Notes: generated from the sequence alone by a model not told the origin. A DNA stretch of 64,000 nucleotides from Takakia lepidozioides (GCA_030704615.1 CM060731.1:48546001-48610000), one strand, 5' to 3'; positions 144-59,100 are shown, counted from the first letter of the stretch. Program-made: numbers and translations.

Positions 144-3100
144 TGGTGGATGTGGTGCGTACAGATAGGCATCTTGAGTTTTACGGAGATGCGAAGAATA
201 TGGCACGGATGTCAGACATTCTGGCTGTATATGCTTGGATTGATCCCTCCACTGGTTATTGCCAAGGTGAACTTCATGCTTGTCCCCCTATTGTCATGGA
301 ATGACAGAACGGTTGATTGGTAAGCTGGTATTGCTGGCCTTAATGCATGGCTTCAAATGACAGTATTTCAAGGACATTTTCCATAGGCAGTCAGATGGGT
401 TTTCTCCCAAACAGCTATTCCTGCAGTAGCCTGCCGTGGGCGATGCAATGTATCATTGTGTGAGTCTCTCCCAGGTATGAAGTGACAGCAGGATTTGATG
501 AACTGACTCTGCAAAATGGCTGCCCTATATTCTGTGTTTGTTTCTGTCAAGTATCCTTATTTTTAGGAAGAGAGAGTTTTCTGCTGTTAATGTAAAGAAG
601 ATGAGGTTTTTTCTTATAAAGTGACCGCATGGAAGCTATAAACTTGTGTGAATCTGCTCAAGTGGGCATAGGAGTTCCATTCCAGCTTCTATATAGGAAG
701 GATAGGAAAGAACGGAGATCTCTTGTTGCAGCAATTGGTGTGCCCTCCACCATATCTTTATGCAGGAAGAATTGACAGCTACTATATTCGCCCACAGTAA
801 GCTTGGGCATGCACTAAGTTATCTGAGTCTATGACATAAGTTTATACAATTGCAGATGAAGTTGTAGCTAAAACAGATTGTTGCTTTGACAGGCATGAGC
901 GATCTGCTGTCCCCATTCATTGTGCTGTTTGATGATGACGCAGACGCATTCTGGTGCTTTGAAAGCCTCCTTAGAAGAGTGGTAAGCCGTAGACCTACCC
1001 TCCCCATGTAGCAAGTTCTTGAATATGCCGATGTGTGAGAGTATTGAATATTTTTGAATGTAAGAGGACAATCGGCTTGTAAGGTCCACATGGTCGGAGA
1101 GCCCCCAATGAGACATTGATAATGGATCAGATGCATCTACTGCAGTGGGCTTTAGGTCGAGTGTGCACCTTGTGAACCAGGTCCTTCTATTGAAACCAGT
1201 TATCAACTGTAAATGCTTCTGTGCCTTTCCCAAATTTCCCAGCAGCTGTACAGTCACTGCTTACTGTGGCCAAGGTCTCTGAATTGCCTGTGCTTTAGAT
1301 AGAGGAGAGATGCTTCCCTGAACCAACAAAGCAACATTCACAGTCATGTGATTCTTTACTGACATGACAATCGGGTATGCAGCGGCAAAACTTCCAAATG
1401 GAAGGGCCGGTGGGAGTGATGAAGCAGCTAGAGTCGCTGTCCAAGATCATGGAGTTGACAGATGCACAGTTGTTCAAGCATCTATTGATGGCTGGTGCTG
1501 ACAACTTCCTTTTTGCATTTCGCATGCTACTGGTCCTTTTTCGTCGAGAGCTCTCTTTTGGTGAAGCCCTTTACATGTGGGAGGTGAGCCCATTTCCATT
1601 CTTCACATGACATCTTCTCCCTTATCCTGGCCTAATTCCATGCTACATATTTCACACTACTTGGCCAACTGGTTTTCAAATGAAACCAAGTGCTCGTGAG
1701 GGAGGAAAAACAATTCTACACGCAAAGCTGCACTACAGATGACTTGATCCCATGGCACCGAGCATTCAAAGAACTTCATCCCTTCTGCATGGCCAGCCCA
1801 CAACTGCAGTGCATGTCTCTTTACAGCAGTGAGATAACGTTGTGGGAGTGAACCAAGTGACATGCTTGTGTGTTAGTTGCTTGTGTTCTTTACTGTTCAT
1901 TTGTGAAGTGTTCTAGCAAATGACATGATCCTGTTGTGGGTCAAGGGTCAGAAAGTCCAAAACCATTCCTATTACAGCAGCAGTGTTGTCTCATTGTTGC
2001 AGTCTGACCAAGCCAATATGTAAACCATTGGACTGATTGAATAGCTTGTCGTTTTGAGGTGAAAGGTGGGCACATGTCTGCTGTACAGAGGCAGAGAGAT
2101 TGAGAGACAACCCAGTAGTAGAGAGTTCACCTGCTGTAGTATTTCTTAGGTGTCCAGTGCGGTTGAGCTGGTTGTGGGGTGGTCTGCTAGATGATGTGGG
2201 CTGCAGACTTTGATCAAGCCATGGCTTGGGCTCTGGAATATAATTGCCTTGATGCACTTGTGTTGAGAAATTCCTCTTCATCAGTGGAGGATCAGTTGCT
2301 TGCTGAAGATGAAAGTTACCTGGTCCAATCACCTGAACCCAGAACTGCCTTCCCTGCAAGCCCCTTGGATCAGCCACACTTGACAACTCCAGTCACATTT
2401 GGCCGGAGCTTTTTGTTGAAGCGGAGTCCCTTTTGTGGCCTGAGACCAGGCCACTTCTGGCCCAAGCACCAGCATCGAACACCACCAACTGTCACAGGCC
2501 TGTTGGGACGAAATGGTGACGAGGAGCTCTCCGTGTTCTGTGTAGCTGCAATTCTTGTCCAGAATCGGTCAAAGCTTCTAAAGGAGGTCCAATCGATGGA
2601 TGATGCCATTAAGGTGAATTGTGTTGCATTCTTCACCATGATATGATGGAGTGATCACCATGATATTTTTCTCACAAGTTTATTTCCGGGTCTTAGAAAA
2701 TAGTAGATGTGGCACAAATACCCAGGCTGGTTCCTCTCATCCAATGTTGTGTGGTAATTGCCAATGGGGGATGGGCTATTTACAATTTGGTGTACGATCT
2801 CACAGTTTGTTGCAATAGTTGACAAACTCCATTAGGTTTGATTGGAGTAGTGGCTGCTGTATGACATGTCTGGAGGGCTTCAATAGTGGCATGCCACAGT
2901 CTGAGATTGAAACAGTCTGTTTCCTATAAAGACTTGGGTTGGTGAGGTAGCTGAGCAGTACTTAAAAGAGTTAAATGGGTTGCTATCAGATTTTCAACGA
3001 CATGGATATGAAAGTCAAGGTGCACAGCTGTGTGCATACTGCCATCAAACTGCGGAAAAAGTACCACAGTCAGGTAGGCCTTATTTTCCACCTTGTTTTC

Positions 3101-4000
3101 TGTACTAAGCATGTCCCCCCGACAGTGTGCATGCATTTAATTGTGCAAGCATGTTCATAAAGTTTGGTTGTCAAGTGGTAAAATGCATTCAGACTGACTT
3201 CATTCAATTGGTCTAATTTCAGCCAGAGGCTGGGAAACCACTGATGAGATTTAGCAGTGGAGGACCCCAAGATTTGGACATATAGCTGGCATGGATGCTA
3301 ACAGACAGTTGGAATTTTGTCTGGTTCAGTTGGCCAAGCGTATCGCCTTGGAGAGAAGATCCAGTACTAGACACCAGCGGGCCTTCCAAATTTAAAATTA
3401 TCATTCTTTTGGGATGGGCTTCAAAATCACAGCCCAAAGGGCTGTATATTCTGTCACGTAACTTTGAACAGTGGAGGTTTTGACTTAGGTCAGTCTCTCT
3501 CCTGTGCTGGTGCAGAAGCCGGAGGGAACTGCTACTTAACCTGTGGTAGGGTATTATTTCTGATCACTATTGAGTTGAAGGTGCTGGACTTGGTTGAATA
3601 CCCACTCATACTGTTTAATCGCCAGTGCTACGCGTGTACTCTCAAGATACACTTATAATTTTTTATTTGTCACGGTCTCTTTTCTCGCAAGCCTCCTCCA
3701 ATCTCTCTCCTCGTTAGCATCATGGCAATCTAGTCCAATATCATGGTTGTGTAGTGTTCATCAAAAGGTCTCTGTAGCCTGGGTCTTTGCCAATTGAATG
3801 ACAAGACGTGGGCATGAGAGAGTTGCTGCATCCTATGATGTGCAAGTTATTTCAAGAAAGGCGCCTTGGTGCTGTGAGTTCGTTAGTCAGATAGGTGGAA
3901 TATGTTTACAGTCATGAGACAGGTTGCACCTTTGTTTTTGCAGGTAAAGAAAGGAAAAGCTCTCGCGAAGTTCTTGGAGTGGGTTTTTTGCTTGACATGA
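144..4000 (+). CDS. TBC/Rab-GAP domain protein, 3' part (5' exons outside window); exons 144-266, 893-981, 1383-1583, 2191-2613, 2990-3073, last exon probably 3944-4000
   Basis: GT-AG spliced exons join in phase to give the TBC motifs VVDVVRTD..YAWIDPSTGYCQGMSDLLSPF..AFWCF, then FLFAFRMLLVLFRRELSFGEALYMWE and LSVFCVAAIL. The terminal exon is uncertain (alternative 3516-3539). Confidence 0.9.
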
Positions 4001-4880
4001 GAAGAGATGCTTGCAGCATGTGGTTGCCATCAAATGTCTTTGATTTGGAAGGACAGATGGAGATACAACATGTGATACCCTTGACAATTGTTGAATGGTC
4101 ACAAATCCATTGCAGTATGGTTACAGTCTGTTCGGGTCTTACATTTGCCATGTTAATCATAAGATTGCGATTTGTTTGCCTCAGGCACTATAAACTGGCT
4201 CTTTAAAAAAATGGAATAGAAACTTGGCTCCTGGATGGTTACAATAAGATCCAAAACATGCAATTGGCTTCAACAGCAGAAAAGATGGTGACCCTCTCCT
4301 GTGCTTGTACCCAATCATTCTGGAGTCAGGAAACTCAAAGTGTCTTGGACTACACCGAAGCGAGAATGGTTTGCTTATTTGACTTTAACTCACTTCCACC
4401 TCAACAAGTTTACTGAACTCCGGAAAAAAAACAGGGGTTAAGAAATTGGAGCGGTAGGAGGGGCCATGCAGAGTTGACTGTCTACGTTGCTAGACATAAT
4501 TGGCCTGCAGTTGGGCTGGCAACTTTTACGTAGATTCTACTCTTGGATCTATAATATTTTGACCAGGCTGACTATTGTAGTGCATTCCACACCCTCACCG
4601 GTTGGATTGAGTGAAAATTGTCAAAGTTCTGGAATGGGCTCACCTTGAATTGCTAACCTATGGAGGTAATTTTGACCCCCCCTCAAACACATACAAAATA
4701 TCCTAATAAAAACAAATGTAGAATACCAAACAACATGTTTATGGGAGGCAGAAGCAGGAAAAATGAACCTGTCACTCAAATAGCCTCAAATTTCATACTT
4801 TGCAAAATCTGAAAACCATAAAAAAATCCCACTAAAACACTATGCTCTCTCTTGTTGTGTGGTGAATGTTTCTGCAAATA

Positions 4881-5090
4881 AAGCCCCCCAAGTTTGGGTG
4901 GCCCTATCCATTAGAGAGTGGTCCACGAATTAAAAAGCAGGGGTTATAGTAAGCTAAACAAGGATTTGAATTAATAACCGTCATGTAAGAGGGTAAGTAA
5001 AGTAAAAAAAAAGGTAGGAAGGTGAGAGGTATTAAATTGGGGATGGTTCAGTCGCCGGTAAGAAGGTTTCTAGGGGTGACATGTGTAGGG
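4881..5090. repeat. Dispersed ~200 bp repeat, copy 1 (possible Mutator-like terminus)
   Basis: AAGCCCCCCAAGTTTGGGTGGCC...AGGATTTGAATTAATAACCGTCA...GGGGATGGTTCA...TAGGGGTGACATGTGT recurs at 50217-50435; lies next to a SWIM-family fragment. Confidence 0.7.
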
Positions 5091-5128
5091 TGGATGGATG
5101 GATGTAACAAGGTGGCGTGACGGTAGCC

Positions 5129-5619
5129 TCACTTATCTCGCCAGATGTCACTTTTTTGGGGGCTGAAATTTGCAATGATTTTGTTGATGCTTAGTCTTAG
5201 GTGCAAGTTGTGCGCTTCGCTGATGTGGGGGGCTAAAGCAATGCGACCACAATCATGTGCTGGCCCATGGCACATGTCTCCAGCTCGATTAATGCGTCTC
5301 TTCTCGTAGTACACGACCTCTGCAATCTTCGGGTCCAAATAGCATTGCTTCACTGCAAATCGACATACACATCCCCTCTTGATGCCTTCACCAGATTTCG
5401 TGTTGGACGTCCTCGATACTTTTGGTTTTGCACCTTGGCGGATACGACAACTCTTGCCTTTCTGCCCTTCTTCTTCAGAGGTCGCGGTTTCCACTTCTTG
5501 GCTGCCATGGCAGATGTAACCTCGAAGACGGCAAAAGTTTTATCCTCTGGCCCGAATGAGCAGTGGTACCTACGACAGAAAGCACATTGCATTACTGTAA
5601 TATGAGGGGATGACCGCAT
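5129..5619 (-). pseudogene. Frameshifted fragment of a plant SWIM zinc-finger / Mutator-like transposase-related protein
   Basis: Two overlapping frames give RYHCSFGPED and KRGCVCRFAVKQCYLDPKIAEVVYYEKRRINRAGDMCHGP, matching the YxCSxGPED / KRGCxCxFxVK...CHGP blocks I recognise from plant SWIM-domain proteins. Confidence 0.7.
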
Positions 5620-7852
5620 GGAAGAGTTCTAGAAGAAGGGGCGCCATGGAACTCGGGTACTAGTACTGTGTAGAGACACAGGAAACTCTGAACTCAAAAC
5701 AATCCTTCAACCCAAACATGATTGTCACACTAAGCAATGAATGGAAACAATATACTTGAAACTTGTATACTTGTACGAGAACCCCATGTTTTCAGATGCA
5801 GATTTTGAGAGGGTCCTCTATGAATCAACTGACTGAGGAAACTGTTGCCAAGATCACTCCTTTGACCCTACACATGACTGTTTCTGGAAACAGTTAAAGG
5901 AAACGATACTTCCAGCAAATTTGTAACATGTCAAGTTAAATAAGCACAGTGTGAAACTAGCTAGAATAAAGCTAGTTATTTGTATTTAACACTTGGATTT
6001 AGGTCAAGTGTTAAATCAAGTGTCAAGTTTAGTTTGACACCTGACCCGTCTTATCTTCACGAGAGCGGCAGTCGCGCGGCTCATCTCTCTCGAGTTGAGC
6101 CTGCGCGACCGAGCTCCTGCATCGTTTAGGACTGAGTGTGCTCATGATGGGAGTGTAGGTTGTTGTGGGGTGGAGTCCCCACAGCTTGGGGTGCCCCTGG
6201 CTCGACTTCTGTTTTAACGAGTGATGTTGAGGGATTTCATATTTCTTGTGTTGAGAGTGTGTGTCCTTTCAAGCTTTCTTATCACTCGAGAGAGATGATG
6301 CTCTTACCTGTGAGTGCAAGGTAGGAGTTGAGGGTTAGCACTTGTACGATTACCTGTGTGTAAGTAGTGCTTAGTTTTAGAAGCTTAAAAAACAAAAACA
6401 AAAACAAAATATGCAGGTTTCGATCAGCGTTGGTTCTGGCATGAGGCCGCCGGGCATGATGGAGCTACACTGCATGGAAGCAGCCTTCGTTTTGGTCGGT
6501 GAGGAGACATCGTGGAGTAGCAGCGATTGGCCGTTGGGAAACTGACCAAGTGCGAGACTTAAAGGAGGAGCCTGTGATCGAGCAGATGGGTAGAACTTCC
6601 GTGCCTGGAGATGGCCGGGCTGCTCGCCTTAGTTTGATGTGCACAGACCAGTGTTAAATTCAAACCAGGACAGACCAGAAGCGGTCAGGAAAGGTAACGG
6701 AAGAGCAGGTGGAGCTGGTGTAGCGGAGCCAGTTGAAGGAGGAGCTGTAAATCCGCTCCCTCCAGTAAATGCAGCGCCGGCAGGTAGAGCACGGCGCAGC
6801 GAGCTGGTTGAAGGTGCAGGCCCCGAGAGAGAAAGCCTAGCAGCAAAGCGATGGAGAACGGGGAGCCCATTGCTGGCATATCATCAACACTGCGAAACCA
6901 GGAGTCTCACAAATCTTCATGCTACTTGTGATTGTGGCTGGGAAAGCTGCTTTCACCTGGTCGATTATCTGCATAAGCAACCAACTTTCTGACAAAAAGG
7001 GTTGTTGGGGGCATTGTTGATTTCGGGGAGTGCAAGGTGCAAAGTCGTTTTTTTTAAGTGCTTCAGGTTTGTACAAAGCCAAGTAGCTGTTGCTGCCTTG
7101 CACCTTGGTTCCACCATTTTGAGGTGGAAAGTCGAATGGTGGTTCACAACCCAGCTTTCAACTCAGCACACTGCCCCGAGTCCAAGATTGTGGCGATACA
7201 GGTCAAGGGAGCTCCAGCTCTACTTGTCTCATCATTGAACACTTCCAACTGATCACTTGCCTCTACTGTCATTTCGGCGTCAAGGGTACTTACTTCTGCA
7301 CAGGCGAGCAGGGGAGGAAATGCGAAGACTCGTAGCAGGAGAAGCAATGCTGACGGATGAGGCCAGCGGACGAGAGCCTCCAAGGGTTGATGGAGAGGCA
7401 GCGGAAGGAGGCTGCAGATTGAGTTCCACTTTACTGAGGCAATCGCAAATTCCTGTAGAGACTTGATAACTGTATGATTGTCTCTCTTATACTGGAGCTG
7501 ATGCAGATGGACCCAGGCCTTGGGTCTGCATGCTGAGCATGGTTCACTTTCTTTTTCCTGGCAGTGAAGTTGTTTGTGCCTTGTGGGGGTGGTGACGGGG
7601 CAATCTGGTGCCTGTTGTCGCCGATCCCTGACCTGTAAATTGCACACTGAAGAAACACGAGTAGTAACAGGAAGGCGGAAACCATTGTAAGCCAACAATA
7701 ATCGCTGGTGAGAGATGCGAATTAGACCAAGTTGATGGAACTTCAAGCTGGTCTTGGCCTTGGATTCCATGCAAAGACGGCCACATTACAGCAGGCCGCC
7801 TGTCCATAAGCCATGAAGGTGCTGCGCAGTGCATCTGCTCTTGAAATCGCCC

Positions 7853-14329: not shown

Positions 14330-14877
14330 ATGAACTTTACAGATGTTCTGGCAGGTGTTGCCATGTTTTTGCCTTCTTCAGTTCAGTGACTAAAGACTCG
14401 CTTCAAAAGATCACAAACCACCTATACATCACAATAAAACAAGGGAGCACGATAAAACGTACCGTGGAGTAACTAAATATGCAGCCAGGATAGGTGCATT
14501 GGAACAAGGGCAGTTTCTCATCATGCTTAAGAAGGTGCTGCTTGAACTGTTTCTTCGACATGGATGTCCCACAGATGTCACATACTACCTAGCTATGTGA
14601 AACTCTTATGTGAGCTCTCAGTTTTCGAGGCATTGAAATATCTCTCCACAACCAGGCTCCATACATGCTACTGCTTTGTACTCAAAGGGCACCACTCCTG
14701 TCACAATACAACCTCCACAATTAGTAAAGTAACAAAGGCTATTCTGCAGTTGGTCACAATCTCTACAGCAAACCTGCACAATTAGCGACATAACTAAGGC
14801 TACTGTACGGAGTAAACAGGTGAGTTCTGTAATAATAGCCTGTTACTATCCAGCAACAACTAAAGACCCTGTAGTCC
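14330..14877 (-). pseudogene. Duplicated ~550 bp TFIIIA fragment (one exon, 14463-14697, plus flanking introns)
   Basis: Closely matches ~53555-54115 in the same orientation. The exon copy has TAT>TAG and a 1-bp deletion relative to the intact exon. Confidence 0.95.
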
Positions 14878-52278: not shown

Positions 52279-55200
52279 TTATTTTACCACATGGTCTCTT
52301 GTCTCCATCTGTCGCCTCACAAGGTCTTCTACTCGTTGTAGTGTAACACGCTGTCGGCCGCCCCGTGGTTTCAACTGGAACTTTATGTCTTCAGCTTCGA
52401 AGTCCCCCTACATCAACCCATGAAACCCATCACAATGAGGATCACACCTGAAGATATGTTGGATCCATGAGATCAGTATAAGAACTTTTGAGGACATCTG
52501 CAATGGACAGGCCACTAGAATACACAATATAACCAACAACCACTACCACATCTTTGTAGGCTTTATCTTTTAAACAAAAATGAATCTAGCATAACAAGCT
52601 TCAGAGTTCAACCCTAAATCACAGTTCCGGCCATCAGTTGGAGTCAGATCACTCCATGGAGGTAGACCGCAGATCTCCAGCTTGAGAGAAGCAAGAGTTC
52701 GACCATGTTCAGCAGAACTTCACCGGTTTGAAGGCCTAGACTTCATATAATTGGGATGATGTCTCTCGGTCAATTGCCAGGCATTCCTTTCCGATTCAAT
52801 TTGGCTGGGCAGTTATGGAACATATTCCTAATTGACTTCGGATAACTGTACATATACAGAAGGGGAAGAGGCTCCTATTTACGCTAACTCCGTTTGGCGT
52901 CACATATATGTAGATACACATATACAGGTTTCATATGATACCAACTGCAGGCCCTTGCTCTTCTGTTACCTGTGAAGGTGGACGGTGCAGGCCGGACATT
53001 TCATGTTTATCGCGCACAGCTTTATAAGCAAAGCGCTTCCCACAACCTGTGTGAGAGCAGCCGTATGGCTTCAGTTCCAGATGCACAGCCCTTATGTGCT
53101 GGTCCAGGTTGGATTTCTGATAAGCACCACAAAAAATCCCCATGCACTTTACATAAGAATTTCAGTCACCCTTTAGGGGATGCCTGCAGCAAAGATGATC
53201 TCTACAGTAGGTCCCAGAAAGACAGAAAGCAGTGAGATTCAAGGACAAGTTAACCACAATATGCTTATGCACAATTTGGTGAAACTTTTACTCATTCTTC
53301 TGCAAGTTTGGGTAATGGATCTGTCCTGCTGCTCAAGGTTGGTCTATGTTGTTTCCATTGGCTGTACCCAAAAAGAAGGTTCCATTGGCCAGGGATTCCA
53401 TTTGGTGCTACTATATCCACTTTCAAAGTTTTCTTGTTGAACCTGCATTCACTCTAAGGATCAGTCCTCCTCCGAATCCAAGGAACGTCTAGATGTTACT
53501 TGCTCATGCACACAAGAGGCTTGTGCTGTTGTCACAGATTGGATAAGTCTTGCCCTTGAACTTTACAGAATGTTCTGAAAGCTTCTGGCAGGTGTTGCCA
53601 TGTTTCTGCCTTCTTCAATTCAGTGACTAAAGACTCTCTTCAAAAGATCGCAAACCACCTATACATCACCATAAACAAGGGATCACCATAAAACGTACCG
53701 TGGAGTAACTAAATATGCAGCCAGGATAGGTGCATTGGAACAAGGGCGGTTTCTCATCATGCTTAAGAAGGTGCTGCTTTAACTGTTTCTTCGACATGGA
53801 TGTCCCACAGATGTCACATACTACATAGCTATGTGAAACTCTTATGTGAGCTCTCAGTTTTGTGAGGCATTGAAATATCTCTCCACAACCGGGCTCCATA
53901 CATGCTACTGCTTTGTACTCAATGGGCACCACTCCTGGTCACAATACAACCTCCACAATTAGAAAAGTAACAAAGGCTATTCTGCAGTTGATCACAATCT
54001 CTACAGCAAACCTGAACAATTTGCGACATAACTAAGGCTACTGTGCAGGGTAAACAGGTGAGTTCTGTAATAATAGCCTGTTACTATCCAACAACAACTA
54101 AAGACCCTGTAGTCCACACTGACCATTTACTATTGGCAAGTTTCCAGTTTCAAGATCTTGAATAAGAGGCTCTCTCATTGTATGCTTTTGTCCTGCAGGT
54201 TCAAAACCTTCAGTGGAGTTCCTCCTCTTGGTTCAGAAAAGCAATGTGTATAGAAAACTGTAGTTGCAGGCCACGCTAGCGTGACCAACGTGTCTGAAAA
54301 TCTTTGAGGAAATCCATTGTTTCACCTGTGATTATCCCTAGTATAAGAAGGGTCACTTGTAACCCCATCTCCAACTGAACAGAGGTATTGCTCTAAAATG
54401 ATACAAGTTAGCTGCAGATGGTGTCCAAATCAGTTCTACAAAAACCAACATTGAAACTGTGTCAAAAACTACTGCACATTTGAGTAAGTGTACCTGTATA
54501 TTCCATCTAGACACAGAGAACGTTGCCTGTAGATTTTTCGGTGGATGCAGCACCGGGACTTCCCAGGAGGTCACCCATCCAAGTACTATTCCGGCCCAAA
54601 GGCGCTTAACTTCAGAGTTCTGATGGGATCTGGTGTAGTAGCCTTGGTATGACCGCATCACTCCCATCTACAAAGTGATCAATGAATGCAAACCTGAATA
54701 GTTATAAAAGTACTTTGAATTGCAGGGGAATATATGAAACCAAGTGTCAGTAATCCACTCAAATACAAAAGAAAGACTGGTCAGCTCTGGTCAAGAGAAC
54801 ATTTTCATTGCCTTATGGATGTTTGGGAATTCAGATAAAGCAAGCTGTCTGGTCCACCCACCCACAAAGAAAAAGGAAAGCAGATAAGAAGTACCACTGA
54901 TCTTCGGCTGACTTTGCGAGTTAGACACTGCAACGATCTATTTCTCTACAACTAGACGGGACCCAGCATGCTGTTGAAAGATGGCGTCCCGCATCTAAAT
55001 GCCCATGTCATGGCAAACAGCTAATTGAGAAGGCTGAAACATTAAGGTGTGATCAGGTCAAGGTTGAGCATCCACAGTAAGAAGAGGCAGGAGCCAGAAT
55101 TGAAGTAAATGACTAGCAAAACGACTGACAGCTTACCATGGACATTATCTTTGTGAGTCCGCAAGAGAGACGGATAGCGAAAGGTTTTGCCGCAGCCTGG

Positions 55201-55446
55201 CTCGGAACACTCAAGATTTCCTTCTGATGCTCGCCTTTTACGATACCCCCCCAGTCTGGTTCCCCATTTCTCGTGCGCCTTGAGGTGTCTCTGCAGGTTT
55301 GCCTTAATGGTGAATGAAATCTTGCAACCCTCTACTGTGCACAAGAAGATTTTCCCCTGATGGGTTAATAGGTGGCGGTTGAGGTGATCTTGCCGCTTGT
55401 ACGCTCTGCCACAACCGGCCATGGTGCATTCAAAGGGTCTCTGCAT
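52279..55446 (-). CDS. TFIIIA: Transcription factor IIIA with seven visible C2H2 fingers; exons 55446-55137, 53934-53699, 53116-52970, 52407-52279
   Basis: In-phase GT-AG exons; YKRQDHLNRHLLTH, KSNLDQHIRAVH, RFAYKAVRDKHEMSGLH and the plant TFIIIA tail GDFEAEDIKFQLKPRGGR. The start codon at 55446 is inferred. Confidence 0.92.
54494..54667 (-). promoter_or_regulatory. Predicted 174-nt 5S-derived poison cassette exon of TFIIIA
   Basis: Acceptor tttgtag|ATGGGAG and donor TATACAG|gtacac; inclusion after the phase-1 donor at 55137 gives TGA at 54614-54612. Confidence 0.75.
54542..54660 (-). rRNA. Full-length 5S rRNA sequence (119 nt) embedded in a TFIIIA intron; probably exonized rather than a free gene
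   Basis: TGATGCGGTCATACCAAGGCTACTACACCAGATCCCATCAGAACTCTGAAGTTAAGCGCC...GGATGGGTGACCTCCTGGGAAGTCCCGGTGCTGCATCCA; single copy; no adjacent oligo-T terminator. Confidence 0.95.
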
Positions 55447-55659
55447 CTGAATCACCAAGTATAAACATTATATTGTCAAGGTTGCTGATGCAGCAACTAC
55501 ACCAAACAGCCGTCTGCATTTGAAAGACATAATCTGAGAAATCACCATAAACTCAGTACCTTCACAGCTTGCCTCGCGCCTTCACACTTTCCCAATCGGC
55601 GTCTGAGAAGTACAATTCCCAGTGAGATCCCTGAAGTCGGCAATGTCCCTTCATGCCAT

Positions 55660-55761: not shown

Positions 55762-56013
55762 AATCTGGTCCGATGTGGTCTTCGTAGACTTGTGGTCTTC
55801 AGAGAAATTTTCGGATTGGCATTGGGCGAGAGTACGATTTGTTTCTCGTGATTGCCAGAGAGCCAAAGGCAGAGGAGAGAGAGAGAGAGAGAGAGAGTGT
55901 AATTATTGGAAAGACGTTTGTTTGCCGTAGCTTGTGGCAACAAATTGGAACAGCACTACCTTTGTGAGTACCGTCATATAGACAATTTATTCGTGTCTGC
56001 CTCAATCGCAGAG

Positions 56014-56122
<109 letters not shown>

Positions 56123-56124
56123 AC

Positions 56125-59100
56125 ATGGAGGAATCACCATTCCGATCGACAGTTTTGAGAGGAAAAGTGGCGCTGCTTACAGGTGGGGGGACAGGTATTG
56201 GACTTGAAATTGCTACGCAATTTGGCCTTCATGGAGCCAAGGTTGCTATCATGGGACGGAGGAAGCAAGTGTTGGATGCGGCCGTTATCGATCTTGGAGC
56301 CCTCGGTATTGAGGTGAATTCTAACGATTTTGATGTAGCAGGAATAGGAGTGAGGGGAAAATACTGAGTGGTTGAGGATGGGTTTCGGACAGGCCATAGG
56401 AGTGGAAGGGGACGTTCGGAAGAAGGAGGACGCCGCCCGAGTAGTAGAGACAGTGATTGAGCAGCTCGGGAGACTTGATATTCTCGTCAATGGCGCTGCT
56501 GGCAACTTTTTGTCTGCAGCGGAAGATCTCTCTCCTAATGGTTTCAAAACAGGCAAGACTCTCTAGGTGTCTTTCGACCACCAAGCAAAAGCAGACCAAT
56601 TCAGGTGGAATTCAAAAGTGAGACTTGGTTTGTCGGTTTTCTTTCTTTTCTTAGCGTGGCTATCCGTCCAAGGCCATCCTAAATTTTCGCTTCTGCCCTG
56701 TTCTAGGTACTGATCTTTCTGTATCTAATGTTTGCTTTGACAGTTATCGATATCGATACTGTGGGCACATTCACCATGTGCCATGCGGCCGTGCAATATC
56801 TGAAGAGGGGAGGAAAAGGGAAGGGCTCCTCGGAGAGCGGGGTTATCTTAAACATAAGCGCTACTTTGCAATTCACAGCGCAGTGGTACCAGATTCACTT
56901 ATCGGCAGCTAAGGTCTCTCTCTGTCTCTGTCTGTGCCTATCACAGATTTCTTTTGCTCTGATGGAGTGCAGTGGGTATTTTTAAGAGCTGACCAAGAGC
57001 GACAGTTGATCTAACTGCTGCCACCCCTCTTTGCAACATGATCTGAACCTTGCATGGATTGATGCCATGATGAAGATGATGAAGATGCAGCTTTCTTCAC
57101 ATGGGCAGGTTGACCCATTACCTTGAGGGATGACAGTGGCCACATTCTGTCATCCATCAGCCACACGACAATTTTATCCCTCACATACACTCACACACAC
57201 ACACACACAGCTGCTTTACAACTGGGCTGGTTGACTATTGACAATGGTGTGAGAAGCAAAGTCTTTATATCCAGTAGCACAATTTTGAATTGATGTTCGT
57301 TTTTAGCAGGTTGTGTTATTTGTATCTGAACAGAACAAGCTGGTTGCAACTGTGCAGGCAGCCATAGACAGCATCACTAGAAGTTTGGCTCTGGAGTGGG
57401 GAACAGACTATGGCATTCGAACTAATGGGATTGCACCTGGCCCTATAGCTGGCACCCCGGGCATGAACAAGCTGGTGCCAGAAGAAGCTGGGGTCAAGGT
57501 ACATGAGTGGGTGCCCTTGGGCAAGATGGGTGAAAAGTGGGATGTTGCCATGGCCTGTTTGTTCCTTGCGTCTGATGCAGGTCAGTCTCCCCCTCCCCCC
57601 AACTCGTTCTGCAGCCATCTATATTCTCTCTGTGTCTCTTAATCATCTGCATCTCGAGGGTGTCTGTTGAGCTGTATGCTCTGTAAGTGGTTCAAGTTGC
57701 TTGACATCAAACTCGTTATTTTTTTCTTTCTTTCTATCTTTCTCTTGATTTACCTCGTTCATCTAGTATCAGCAATGAAGACAAGACAGAGAAGTACTCA
57801 TGTGATGTTGTTTGTCATAGGCTTGTGGCCTGAGACCAACAAGAGAGAGTGTTGTTTAGTTATGTCAAGACTAGTTAGGTTCTAGATCATCTACATCTAG
57901 TTCCTGAAAGTTTAGAGACATCACACACCTGAACCATGTTCAGCCCTTTCAACATTAGATCTCTATATGTCATTCCCTAAACCACGATCTCGAGGCTGAG
58001 CCTAATTCCCTGGTCCTGTCGTGGTCGAACTTTTGGGCTGCTCACAGACAGCAGATTGAGGTGTGTGTGAGGTGCTTTCTAGAGGATATCTGGAAAGCCG
58101 AACTAATTGGTTATATCAAGGTGAGTCACACTACTGGGGTGAGCCCCTCACAAAGGTAGTGCCTATTCCCTATGTTTCCGCAAACTGGGCGCGGGGTGTG
58201 TGGCCACAAGGATACGGCAAACAAAGTCTTATTAACCACAGGACAATAGAAACCAGATTCTGAACTATAAAAGTTCGAGATCCAGTCAAATCATTCATAG
58301 ACTTCAGGTCTTAAGGATGTAGAAAACCTTCATGCATAGTTTCCTTTTGAACAAGCTCGTATGGTTGTTGAGAAAGTTAAGAAACTTAACAAGGTATCCT
58401 ATCTCAGGCCAGCTGTATACCTCATGTATGGCGTAAGGTTAGAAACCAGGAAAGAGGTGGTAGCTTGAGCCATCAGAATACTATTGAAAGTGCCTCATAG
58501 TGTTTCATACCATGGCTTATTCAAAATGCTGTCTACCATCACTAAATGATCAATGTGTCCAAGCTTAGGAGAGAAGTCATGTCTAAGAAGGAAGGTTTGA
58601 AGTAGAGGAAGCTTTTCCTACTTCTTCACCTATAATCTAAGATAGTTCAATCTCTTGAGACCTGTCACAGCCATAGACTATCATAATACATATATTCCAC
58701 AAAATAAGAAGATAACCATAAAACCAGATTAAGTGCATGTGGTAGCACTTGAGAAAGCATGGACCAGTAATGCTGCAGGTCCATATCATAGACCAAGCAG
58801 CCAAGCTAGCCCTCAGTTTTTCGTTGCCCACTTAGCCTTTCTTGTATGTTTACCATCTAAAGAAAGTGAAGCTGCCTCACCTAGTCTCATCATAGGCATG
58901 CACACACGACCATAGTTAGTGTCAATATGTGAGAAATACCAGATATGGTGCCACCCACTGAGGCAGCCTTATGTACTAGAGAGGGCTGCTAACAGCAATC
59001 CATTCTCTAGGAAGAGCATATTGCAGCTCCTTAACTCCATTCTGTAAACTCATAAAGAGCAAAAAGTGGCTCCTTAATGAGCACACCATAGGTCACTACC

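What the first reader, a model, noticed from the sequence alone, without database searches (positions are those of the whole stretch)
54494..54667. Near-intact 5S rRNA exonized in TFIIIA, in a different intron from the known P5SM exon
Seen: a complete 119-nt 5S sequence lies sense within the TFIIIA intron, has no adjacent T-run terminator, is bracketed by AG and GT sites, and gives an in-frame TGA 18 codons in. Known: land-plant TFIIIA is regulated by a 5S-derived cassette exon (P5SM) that binds ribosomal protein L5 and couples to NMD; in angiosperms it is a diverged mimic between fingers 2 and 3. Here it falls between the fingers equivalent to 5 and 6 and is almost canonical 5S with the internal control region intact. 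Inference: an independent or repeated recruitment of 5S into the same gene, or a copy kept current by gene conversion; it could sense TFIIIA (as DNA and RNA) as well as L5. Whether moss orthologues are already described with this position needs a literature check.
Basis: partly seen in the sequence, partly recalled or inferred. Interest (0 to 1): 0.8.

Follow-up and report, generated by a model that had tools for sequence, protein, structure and literature searches.

The report
Fresh 5S rRNA poison exon in TFIIIA
A moss-type plant has spliced an almost unchanged copy of 5S ribosomal RNA, carrying a stop codon, into the gene for its own 5S transcription factor, in a different intron from the known plant 5S-mimic exon, so this feedback device seems to have been invented twice in one gene.

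Summary
A complete 5S rRNA (Rfam 110 bits) lies sense at 54661-54542 on the minus strand, inside a 174-nt cassette exon (54667-54494) of a TFIIIA gene. Transcript contigs of the same organism show both predicted inclusion junctions and the skipping junction. Inclusion gives an in-frame TGA at the 19th codon.

The cassette sits in the ancient phase-1 intron between the fingers that match angiosperm ZF5 and ZF6. In Physcomitrium, Ceratodon, Marchantia, Arabidopsis and a Ginkgo model, the 5S-like element lies between ZF2 and ZF3. There the ZF5|ZF6 intron, checked in the four fetched loci, holds no 5S.

This gene has only seven fingers and lacks ZF2 and the canonical cassette. The 5S body matches genuine moss rDNA-linked 5S genes at 118 of 120 positions. 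Canonical mimics match at 59-73%. It has no TATA box and no T-run, which points to an RNA-mediated insertion.

Best reading: an independent second exonization of 5S that works like P5SM. L5 sensing and NMD coupling are inferred, not shown.

The scan found the sister copy earlier on another piece of this genome (s1-476563). I rate this a new variant of a known kind.

The parts
55137..55446 (-). First coding exon of TFIIIA. ATG at 55446-55444, and the product starts MQRPFEC. It holds three C2H2 fingers equivalent to angiosperm ZF3, ZF4 and ZF5, and ends in phase 1 (CAT G|GT).
   Evidence: Translation. Exact transcript contigs 55137-55302 and 55273-55448. tblastn and protein comparison with Physcomitrium, Ceratodon, Triticum and Arabidopsis TFIIIA. 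No in-frame ATG in the putative upstream exon.
54668..55136 (-). Upstream part (469 nt) of the ZF5|ZF6 intron, removed when the cassette is included.
   Evidence: Joint 54667<>55137 with GT..AG ends in X1 and X2.
54494..54667 (-). 174-nt cassette (poison) exon: 6 nt, then the 120-nt 5S body, then a 48-nt tail.
   Evidence: Both flanking joints and the skipping joint are seen in transcript contigs. Stops in frame.
54542..54661 (-). 5S rRNA body, 118/120 identical to genuine moss rDNA-linked 5S genes. The differences are at 54581 and 54565.
   Evidence: Rfam 110.2 bits. Comparison with 32 metagenomic 5S genes. Folds into the three-way 5S junction.
54612..54614 (-). First in-frame stop (TGA), 118 nt upstream of the next exon junction. 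TAA follows at 54608-54606.
   Evidence: The TGA is native to the moss 5S sequence.
53935..54493 (-). Downstream part (559 nt) of the ZF5|ZF6 intron.
   Evidence: Joint 53934<>54494 with GT..AG ends, on a contig of the sister copy or an allele. The donor ACAG|GTACAC is intact in the window.
53699..53934 (-). Exon with the ZF6 and ZF7 equivalents and the first half of ZF8.
   Evidence: Joints. tblastn.
52970..53116 (-). Exon with the second half of ZF8, and ZF9.
   Evidence: Joints 53116<>53699 and 52407<>52970.
52279..52407 (-). Last coding exon (GDFEAED...RGGR tail typical of plant TFIIIA), with stop TAA at 52281-52279.
   Evidence: tblastn to plant TFIIIA C-termini.

Best explanation
This is an alternatively spliced, stop-carrying cassette exon made from a nearly unchanged 5S rRNA. 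The 5S was inserted, most likely through an RNA intermediate, into the ancient phase-1 intron between the ZF5- and ZF6-equivalent fingers of a seven-finger TFIIIA gene. That gene has lost the ZF2 exon and with it the canonical 5S-mimic (P5SM) exon of land plants. Shown: the 5S is spliced into mRNA, the exon is also skipped, inclusion truncates the protein after three fingers, and the position differs from that in other land plants. Inferred: it works like P5SM. When ribosomal protein L5 (uL18) exceeds free 5S rRNA, it binds the 5S fold in the pre-mRNA. The 3' splice site lies only 6-7 nt before helix I, so binding favours skipping and gives productive TFIIIA mRNA and more 5S rRNA. Otherwise the exon is included. 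The stop, 118 nt before the next junction, then sends the mRNA to nonsense-mediated decay or yields a three-finger stub. Because the copy is still essentially 5S, TFIIIA itself could also bind it, as RNA or as DNA. That is speculation.
For: The 5S is full length and sense. Inclusion and skipping joints with GT..AG ends appear in two runs of the same organism, and the sister copy uses the same exon. There are in-frame TGA and TAA stops. Finger equivalence to ZF3-9 was checked against fetched proteins. No ZF2 or ZF1 occurs anywhere in the window, and the ORF opens at MQRPFEC. The canonical cassette lies between ZF2 and ZF3 in Physcomitrium (40.5 bits), Ceratodon (39.7), Marchantia (59.9) and Arabidopsis, and in a Ginkgo protein model. 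The ZF5|ZF6 intron is orthologous and phase 1 in all the fetched loci, but there it is short in all but Sphagnum and holds no 5S. The cassette is 118/120 identical to genuine moss 5S genes that sit behind the LSU rRNA and have a TATA box and a T-run; the cassette has neither flank. After the two gene copies split, the 5S body shows 1 listed change in 120 nt. Over the same split, the 48-nt tail shows 3 events and the coding exons differ by about 4-7%. Literature for the mechanism in angiosperms: PMC3378873, PMC3355732, PMC6164485.
Against: There is no test of L5 or TFIIIA binding, of NMD sensitivity, or of regulated switching. Contig depths cannot rank isoforms. Near-identity to 5S could mean a young, not yet decayed insertion, or gene conversion, rather than selection. 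The 54494>53934 joint is documented only on the sister copy or an allele. The count of 5S-body changes rests on a truncated table (19 rows not shown). Whether this genome holds another TFIIIA copy with ZF2 and the canonical cassette could not be checked. Angiosperm TFIIIA-7ZF is reported not to bind 5S rDNA (PMC6164485), so the role of a natively seven-finger protein is itself open.
Confidence: 0.68

Rival explanations
1. Passive retroposed 5S pseudogene. A dispersed 5S copy landed by chance in a TFIIIA intron and is included at a low level through fortuitous AG and GT sites, without any regulatory role.
For: This genome holds other dispersed 5S retrocopies (scan notes s1-459580, s1-479332, unchecked). 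The copy is almost undecayed, as a young insertion would be. No regulation was shown, and contig depths are low.
Against: Two gene copies that differ by about 4-7% in coding exons both keep the exon, its junctions and an almost unchanged 5S body, while the 48-nt tail drifted. The host is the one gene family in plants known to use exactly this device. By a rough inference, the target is a 1.2-kb intron in a genome of at least 325 Mb. The gene has lost the canonical cassette, so a replacement makes sense.
Confidence: 0.14
2. This is the same ancestral P5SM exon, not an independent one. Either it was relocated by rearrangement, or ZF5|ZF6 is an old alternative position, and gene conversion with the rDNA 5S genes keeps it close to 5S.
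For: The exon size (174 vs 175 nt in Arabidopsis) and the stop-to-junction distance (118 vs 121 nt; PMC3378873) are alike. The 3' splice site abuts helix I, as in Physcomitrium and Ceratodon. The Physcomitrium and Ceratodon mimics share the moss-type CCAGAU/CUCUGAAG helix III pair with genuine moss 5S, so mimics may track 5S.
Against: There is no similarity outside the 5S body. Identity to the canonical mimics is 60-73%, no higher than their identity to genuine 5S. Homology ends exactly at the mature RNA ends. Sphagnum fallax TFIIIA, which also lacks ZF2, has no mimic at all, which fits loss followed by regain.
Confidence: 0.12
3. A working Pol III 5S gene nested in the intron. It would act as a 5S gene or as a DNA-level TFIIIA binding site, and its splicing would be incidental.
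For: The internal control region is unchanged, since the body is 118/120 identical to genuine genes.
Against: Genuine moss 5S genes have a TATA-like box near -28 and a T-run directly after the 3' end. Here both are missing, and the first T5 lies about 70 nt downstream. The spliced use as an exon is documented.
Confidence: 0.05

Closest known systems
P5SM (plant 5S rRNA mimic) suicide exon of land-plant TFIIIA (Hammond et al. 2009; Fu et al. 2009; described in PMC3378873, PMC3355732, PMC6164485)
   Same: Same gene family. It is a 5S-derived structured RNA inside an alternatively spliced cassette exon, and inclusion brings an in-frame stop. The exon is about 175 nt, with the stop about 120 nt before the next junction. 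The 3' splice site lies a few nt before helix I.
   Different: It lies in the ZF5|ZF6 intron instead of ZF2|ZF3 (the 'third exon', 'after the first two ZFs'). It is 98.3% identical to genuine 5S (Rfam 110 bits), against 59-73% (at most 60 bits, and undetected in Arabidopsis). The host gene has seven fingers and lacks the canonical cassette. There is no sequence similarity outside the 5S body, so it is probably an independent origin.
[quoted passage not shown]
   Same: The 120-nt transcribed region is identical at 118 positions, including the internal control region and the native UGA in helix III.
   Different: It has no TATA-like box, no GTCG-type start context and no T-run terminator. It is a single copy inside a Pol II intron, and it is spliced into mRNA.
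Dispersed 5S retrocopies and 5S-LINE chimeras noted elsewhere in this genome by the scan (s1-459580, s1-479332, s1-479386; unchecked AI notes)
   Same: A whole 5S RNA copied into a new place without its promoter and terminator flanks.
   Different: No LINE tail, poly-A or convincing target-site duplication could be shown here. This copy has been recruited as an exon.

Membership tests
P5SM-type suicide exon of TFIIIA | 5S rRNA-like structured element inside TFIIIA pre-mRNA, sense strand | tested here: met
   Rfam 5S 110.2 bits on the coding strand. Host identified as TFIIIA by its best named relatives and shared intron positions.
P5SM-type suicide exon of TFIIIA | The element lies in an alternatively spliced cassette exon (both included and skipped forms exist) | tested here: met
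   Joints 55137>54667, 54494>53934 and 55137>53934 in transcript contigs. The 3' joint is documented on the sister copy or an allele.
P5SM-type suicide exon of TFIIIA | Inclusion introduces a premature stop well upstream of an exon junction | tested here: met
   TGA at 54614-54612, 118 nt before the junction, then TAA.
P5SM-type suicide exon of TFIIIA | Position between the second and third zinc fingers (third exon) | tested here: not met
   Here it lies between the ZF5 and ZF6 equivalents. The canonical place was verified in Physcomitrium, Ceratodon, Marchantia and Arabidopsis, and in a Ginkgo protein model.
P5SM-type suicide exon of TFIIIA | Common descent with the canonical exon (similarity beyond what 5S ancestry gives) | tested here: not met
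   60-73% identity to canonical mimics, the same as their identity to genuine 5S. No similarity in the exon flanks.
P5SM-type suicide exon of TFIIIA | L5 (uL18) binding promotes exon skipping; the included form is an NMD target | not testable with these tools
   This needs binding and splicing assays and RNA-seq with NMD blocked.
Functional Pol III 5S rRNA gene | 120-nt body with an intact internal control region | tested here: met
   118/120 identical to 32 genuine genes.
Functional Pol III 5S rRNA gene | Upstream TATA-like box and a T-run terminator directly after the gene; place in the rDNA unit | tested here: not met
   Genuine genes show these features and sit about 350 nt behind the LSU rRNA. 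The cassette has neither flank and lies in a Pol II intron.
TFIIIA | Array of C2H2 fingers orthologous to plant TFIIIA, with shared intron positions and the GDF..RGGR C-terminal tail | tested here: met
TFIIIA | Nine fingers (eight in Physcomitrium, Ceratodon and Marchantia) | tested here: not met
   Seven fingers, starting at the ZF3 equivalent. The Sphagnum fallax protein likewise lacks ZF2.

The most novel reading that the evidence does not exclude
TFIIIA genes capture fresh 5S rRNA copies as poison exons more than once. After an early moss lineage lost ZF2 together with the ancestral mimic, a retroposed 5S was recruited anew in another intron. This rebuilt the same L5-sensing feedback by convergence. 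Because the new copy keeps an intact internal control region and full TFIIIA-binding surfaces, it may add a direct TFIIIA-sensing arm, as RNA or as DNA, that the old diverged mimic lacks.
Probability: 0.2. Interest if true: 0.8.

Novelty: new variant of a known kind. Interest (0 to 1): 0.64.

Why it matters
The 5S-mimic exon of TFIIIA is the textbook plant case of a structured RNA that controls splicing by imitating a protein's natural partner. It has been treated as one ancient, fixed event at the base of land plants. A second cassette in another intron of the same gene would change that picture. Here it is made from an almost pristine 5S, in a lineage that lost the first cassette. That would show the device is easy to evolve and strongly favoured. 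It would also offer a natural 'time zero' mimic to compare with the diverged ones, showing which 5S features are needed for sensing and which are free to drift. Finally, it raises the question of how a natively seven-finger TFIIIA serves 5S transcription.

Tried and rejected
1. The whole-library HMMER search with the first exon was swamped by poly-zinc-finger proteins. Only a handful of TFIIIA hits were usable.
2. The word search with the same exon found only P0028. Its contigs L003 and L004 hold a lone pseudogene exon with a stop and no 5S, so they were dropped.
3. Target-site duplication: the repeat TTTGTAGA at 54674-54667 and 54442-54435 is at chance level. Two 8-11-nt repeats were found and about two are expected.
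4. LINE tail: no match of the cassette tail or flanks elsewhere in the window, and none in the scan's index.
5. An exact junction pattern found nothing in metagenomes.
6. Rfam does not detect the Arabidopsis mimic. A purpose-built model R1 does (79 bits) and still finds nothing in the Sphagnum fallax locus.
7. The TGA as a sign of selection for a stop was rejected. It is native to moss 5S, and a TAA follows in the same frame anyway.
8. Fu 2009, Hammond 2009 and Barbazuk 2010 are not held.
Exons were searched one by one by reference.

Full report
**Observation.** Rfam finds exactly one 5S rRNA in the 64-kb window. It is full length, at 54660..54542 on the minus strand, with 110.2 bits against a gathering score of 38 (again). 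The sequence shows an AG just before 54667 and a GT just after 54494. The isolated 125 nt fold into the three-armed 5S shape. The thermodynamic z-scores are unremarkable. They are no argument either way.

**Gene model and transcripts.** The host is a minus-strand C2H2 zinc-finger gene.
- One run search gave two runs of the same coded organism, kept as contigs.
- The contigs cover exons and leave most intron bins empty, and they carry GT..AG joints. They are therefore RNA-derived.
- The joints define these exons: 55446(ATG)-55137, 53934-53699, 53116-52970 and 52407-52279.
- They also define the cassette 54667-54494. Joints 55137>54667 and 54494>53934 show inclusion in both runs. Joint 55137>53934 shows skipping in X1.
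- Exon translations are open and give seven intact C2H2 fingers and a plant-TFIIIA C-terminal tail, about 273 aa in all.
- The cassette is 174 nt, a multiple of three. Read from the split codon it gives D-GSDAVIPRLLHQIPSEL-stop. The TGA is at 54614-54612, 118 nt before the next junction, and a TAA follows two codons later.

**Which copy the contigs come from.** The runs hold two further versions of parts of this gene.
- One version matches a 534-bp pseudo-fragment in this same window (14346-14877, 95.5% identical, with a stop and a 1-nt deletion).
- The other is a sister copy, about 93-95% alike in its laid contigs. The scan reported it on another piece of this genome (s1-476563).
- The contig with the 54494>53934 joint carries three differences from the window (54515, 54526, 54540), so it belongs to the sister copy or an allele.
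- The window's own sequence is matched exactly by the contigs with the 55137>54667 joint and with the skipping joint.

**Position in the gene.** Fetched proteins settle the finger numbering.
- A Triticum TFIIIA (P0111) and the Arabidopsis protein (P0293) have nine fingers. The window's fingers align to ZF3-ZF9 of these.
- The window ORF opens after a TAA at 55470-55468 and starts MQRPFEC. A putative upstream exon has no in-frame ATG.
- No ZF2-like or ZF1-like sequence exists anywhere in the window. A divergently transcribed gene starts about 700 nt upstream.
- I fetched the loci of Physcomitrium patens, Ceratodon purpureus, Marchantia polymorpha, Sphagnum fallax and Arabidopsis thaliana.
- Rfam places a diverged 5S-like element between ZF2 and ZF3 in Physcomitrium (40.5 bits), Ceratodon (39.7 bits) and Marchantia (59.9 bits).
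- In Arabidopsis the element is too diverged for Rfam. BLAST and a purpose-built covariance model find it at 1552-1692, again between ZF2 and ZF3.
- A Ginkgo protein model (P0144) reads through a 5S-like exon at the same place.
- This agrees with the literature, which speaks of the 'third exon', of a stop 'after the first two ZFs', and of conservation from moss to flowering plants (PMC3355732, PMC6164485, PMC3378873).
- The intron after ZF5 is orthologous and phase 1 (CAT G|GT) in all six genes. It is about 110-300 nt in the four genes that carry the canonical cassette, and it holds no 5S there. In the window it is 1,202 nt.

**How close to real 5S.** A degenerate 49-nt pattern from the cassette, scanned over JGI metagenomes, returned 32 contigs.
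- All carry one and the same 120-nt 5S, while their spacers differ widely.
- Where the contigs are long enough, the 5S sits about 350 nt behind the 3' end of the LSU rRNA on the same strand. This is the linked rDNA arrangement described for bryophytes (PMC6739443).
- These genes have a TATA-like box near -28 and a T-run directly after ...GCATCCA. Rfam scores them at 109.1 bits.
- The window cassette matches them at 118 of 120 positions. The canonical mimics match at 59-73%.
- The two differences are at 54581 and 54565. In the Rfam alignment both fall in the internal-loop part of helix IV and look compatible with pairing. That is my inference.
- At 54581 all other contigs laid in X1 read the genuine base, so that change is private to this copy.
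- The UGA and its helix III partner are native to this moss 5S type. They are not an adaptation.

**Origin.** Similarity to 5S begins at the first base of the mature RNA and ends at its last. The promoter and terminator flanks of genuine genes are missing, and no similarity to the canonical exons exists outside the 5S body.
- This is the footprint of an RNA-mediated copy, not of a moved P5SM exon or a DNA copy of an rDNA spacer.
- I could not show a target-site duplication or a LINE tail, so the route stays inferred.
- Both gene copies have the cassette, so the insertion predates their split.
- Since then the 5S body shows one listed change in 120 nt, while the 48-nt tail shows three events and the coding exons differ by about 4-7%.
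- For neutral sequence at about 6%, some seven changes would be expected. My Poisson estimate for one or fewer is about 0.007. It rests on a table from which 19 less-supported rows were left out.
- The body is therefore held by selection or by gene conversion.
- Sphagnum fallax TFIIIA also lacks ZF2. Neither Rfam, BLAST nor the model R1 finds any mimic in it. This fits loss of the old cassette in early-diverging mosses and a regain here.

**Mechanism.** Exonization, skipping, the premature stop and the new position are shown. The rest is inferred by analogy with P5SM.
- L5 binding to the 5S fold, next to the 3' splice site, would favour skipping and productive mRNA.
- Inclusion would give NMD or a three-finger stub.
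- Binding of TFIIIA to this near-native 5S, as RNA or as DNA, is possible but untested.

**Limits.**
- The organism is coded. By protein distance it is none of Physcomitrium, Ceratodon or Sphagnum fallax.
- I could not search the rest of this genome for another TFIIIA copy, nor compare the cassette with its own rDNA.
- Contig depth cannot rank isoforms.
- The three primary papers are not held. No held paper links TFIIIA with Takakia or Sphagnum.
Exons were handled one by one by reference.

Noticed in passing
window 14346-14877 (minus-strand sense): A 534-bp duplicate of the ZF6-ZF8 exon plus flanking intron of this TFIIIA gene. It is 95.5% identical and carries an in-frame stop and a 1-nt deletion. 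Contigs in both runs match this fragment rather than the main copy, so it appears to be transcribed.
   Followed up: partly
L005 (Sphagnum fallax TFIIIA locus, gene 3001-6185): The Sphagnum fallax TFIIIA lacks ZF2 and has an extra finger between the ZF4 and ZF5 equivalents. Its ZF5|ZF6 intron is about 1.1 kb. No 5S-like element is detectable anywhere in the gene or within 3 kb of flanks, by Rfam, BLAST or a P5SM covariance model. This is a possible case of a land plant without the 5S-mimic switch.
   Followed up: partly
L001 2906-3022, L006 2465-2584, L002 3048-3171, L007 1552-1692: The canonical mimics of the two Bryopsida mosses carry the same helix III pair (CCAGAU / CUCUGAAG) as genuine moss 5S. 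The Marchantia and Arabidopsis mimics have the G-C version, as in the Rfam consensus. The mimic may track its lineage's own 5S, through co-evolution with L5 or through gene conversion.
   Followed up: partly
L008-L039 (32 JGI metagenome contigs): One invariant 120-nt 5S rRNA sequence is shared by 32 contigs with very different spacers, several of them behind an LSU rRNA. They are probably many moss species, and they show how slowly moss 5S evolves.
   Followed up: partly
window 52408-53701: A contig in X1 joins 52408 to 53701 with non-canonical ends (TA..CG) and one extra letter. This skips the ZF8/ZF9 exon. It may be a variant of the sister copy or an artefact.
   Followed up: no
window 55880-56130: A long (CT)n/(GA)n microsatellite of about 230 bp lies in the roughly 700-bp gap between TFIIIA and a divergently transcribed short-chain dehydrogenase-like gene that starts near 56130 on the plus strand.
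   Followed up: no
P0144 (Ginkgo biloba Gb_35789 protein model): This annotated protein reads straight through the 5S-mimic exon (translated 5S-like stretch ...GWVTSCEDP...) between ZF2 and ZF3. It is an annotation artefact that nonetheless marks the cassette position.
   Followed up: no
window 55446-52279 (whole gene): The default product is a seven-finger protein, equivalent to the angiosperm TFIIIA-7ZF variant. PMC6164485 says that variant does not bind 5S rDNA. How this protein serves 5S transcription is unexplained.
   Followed up: no
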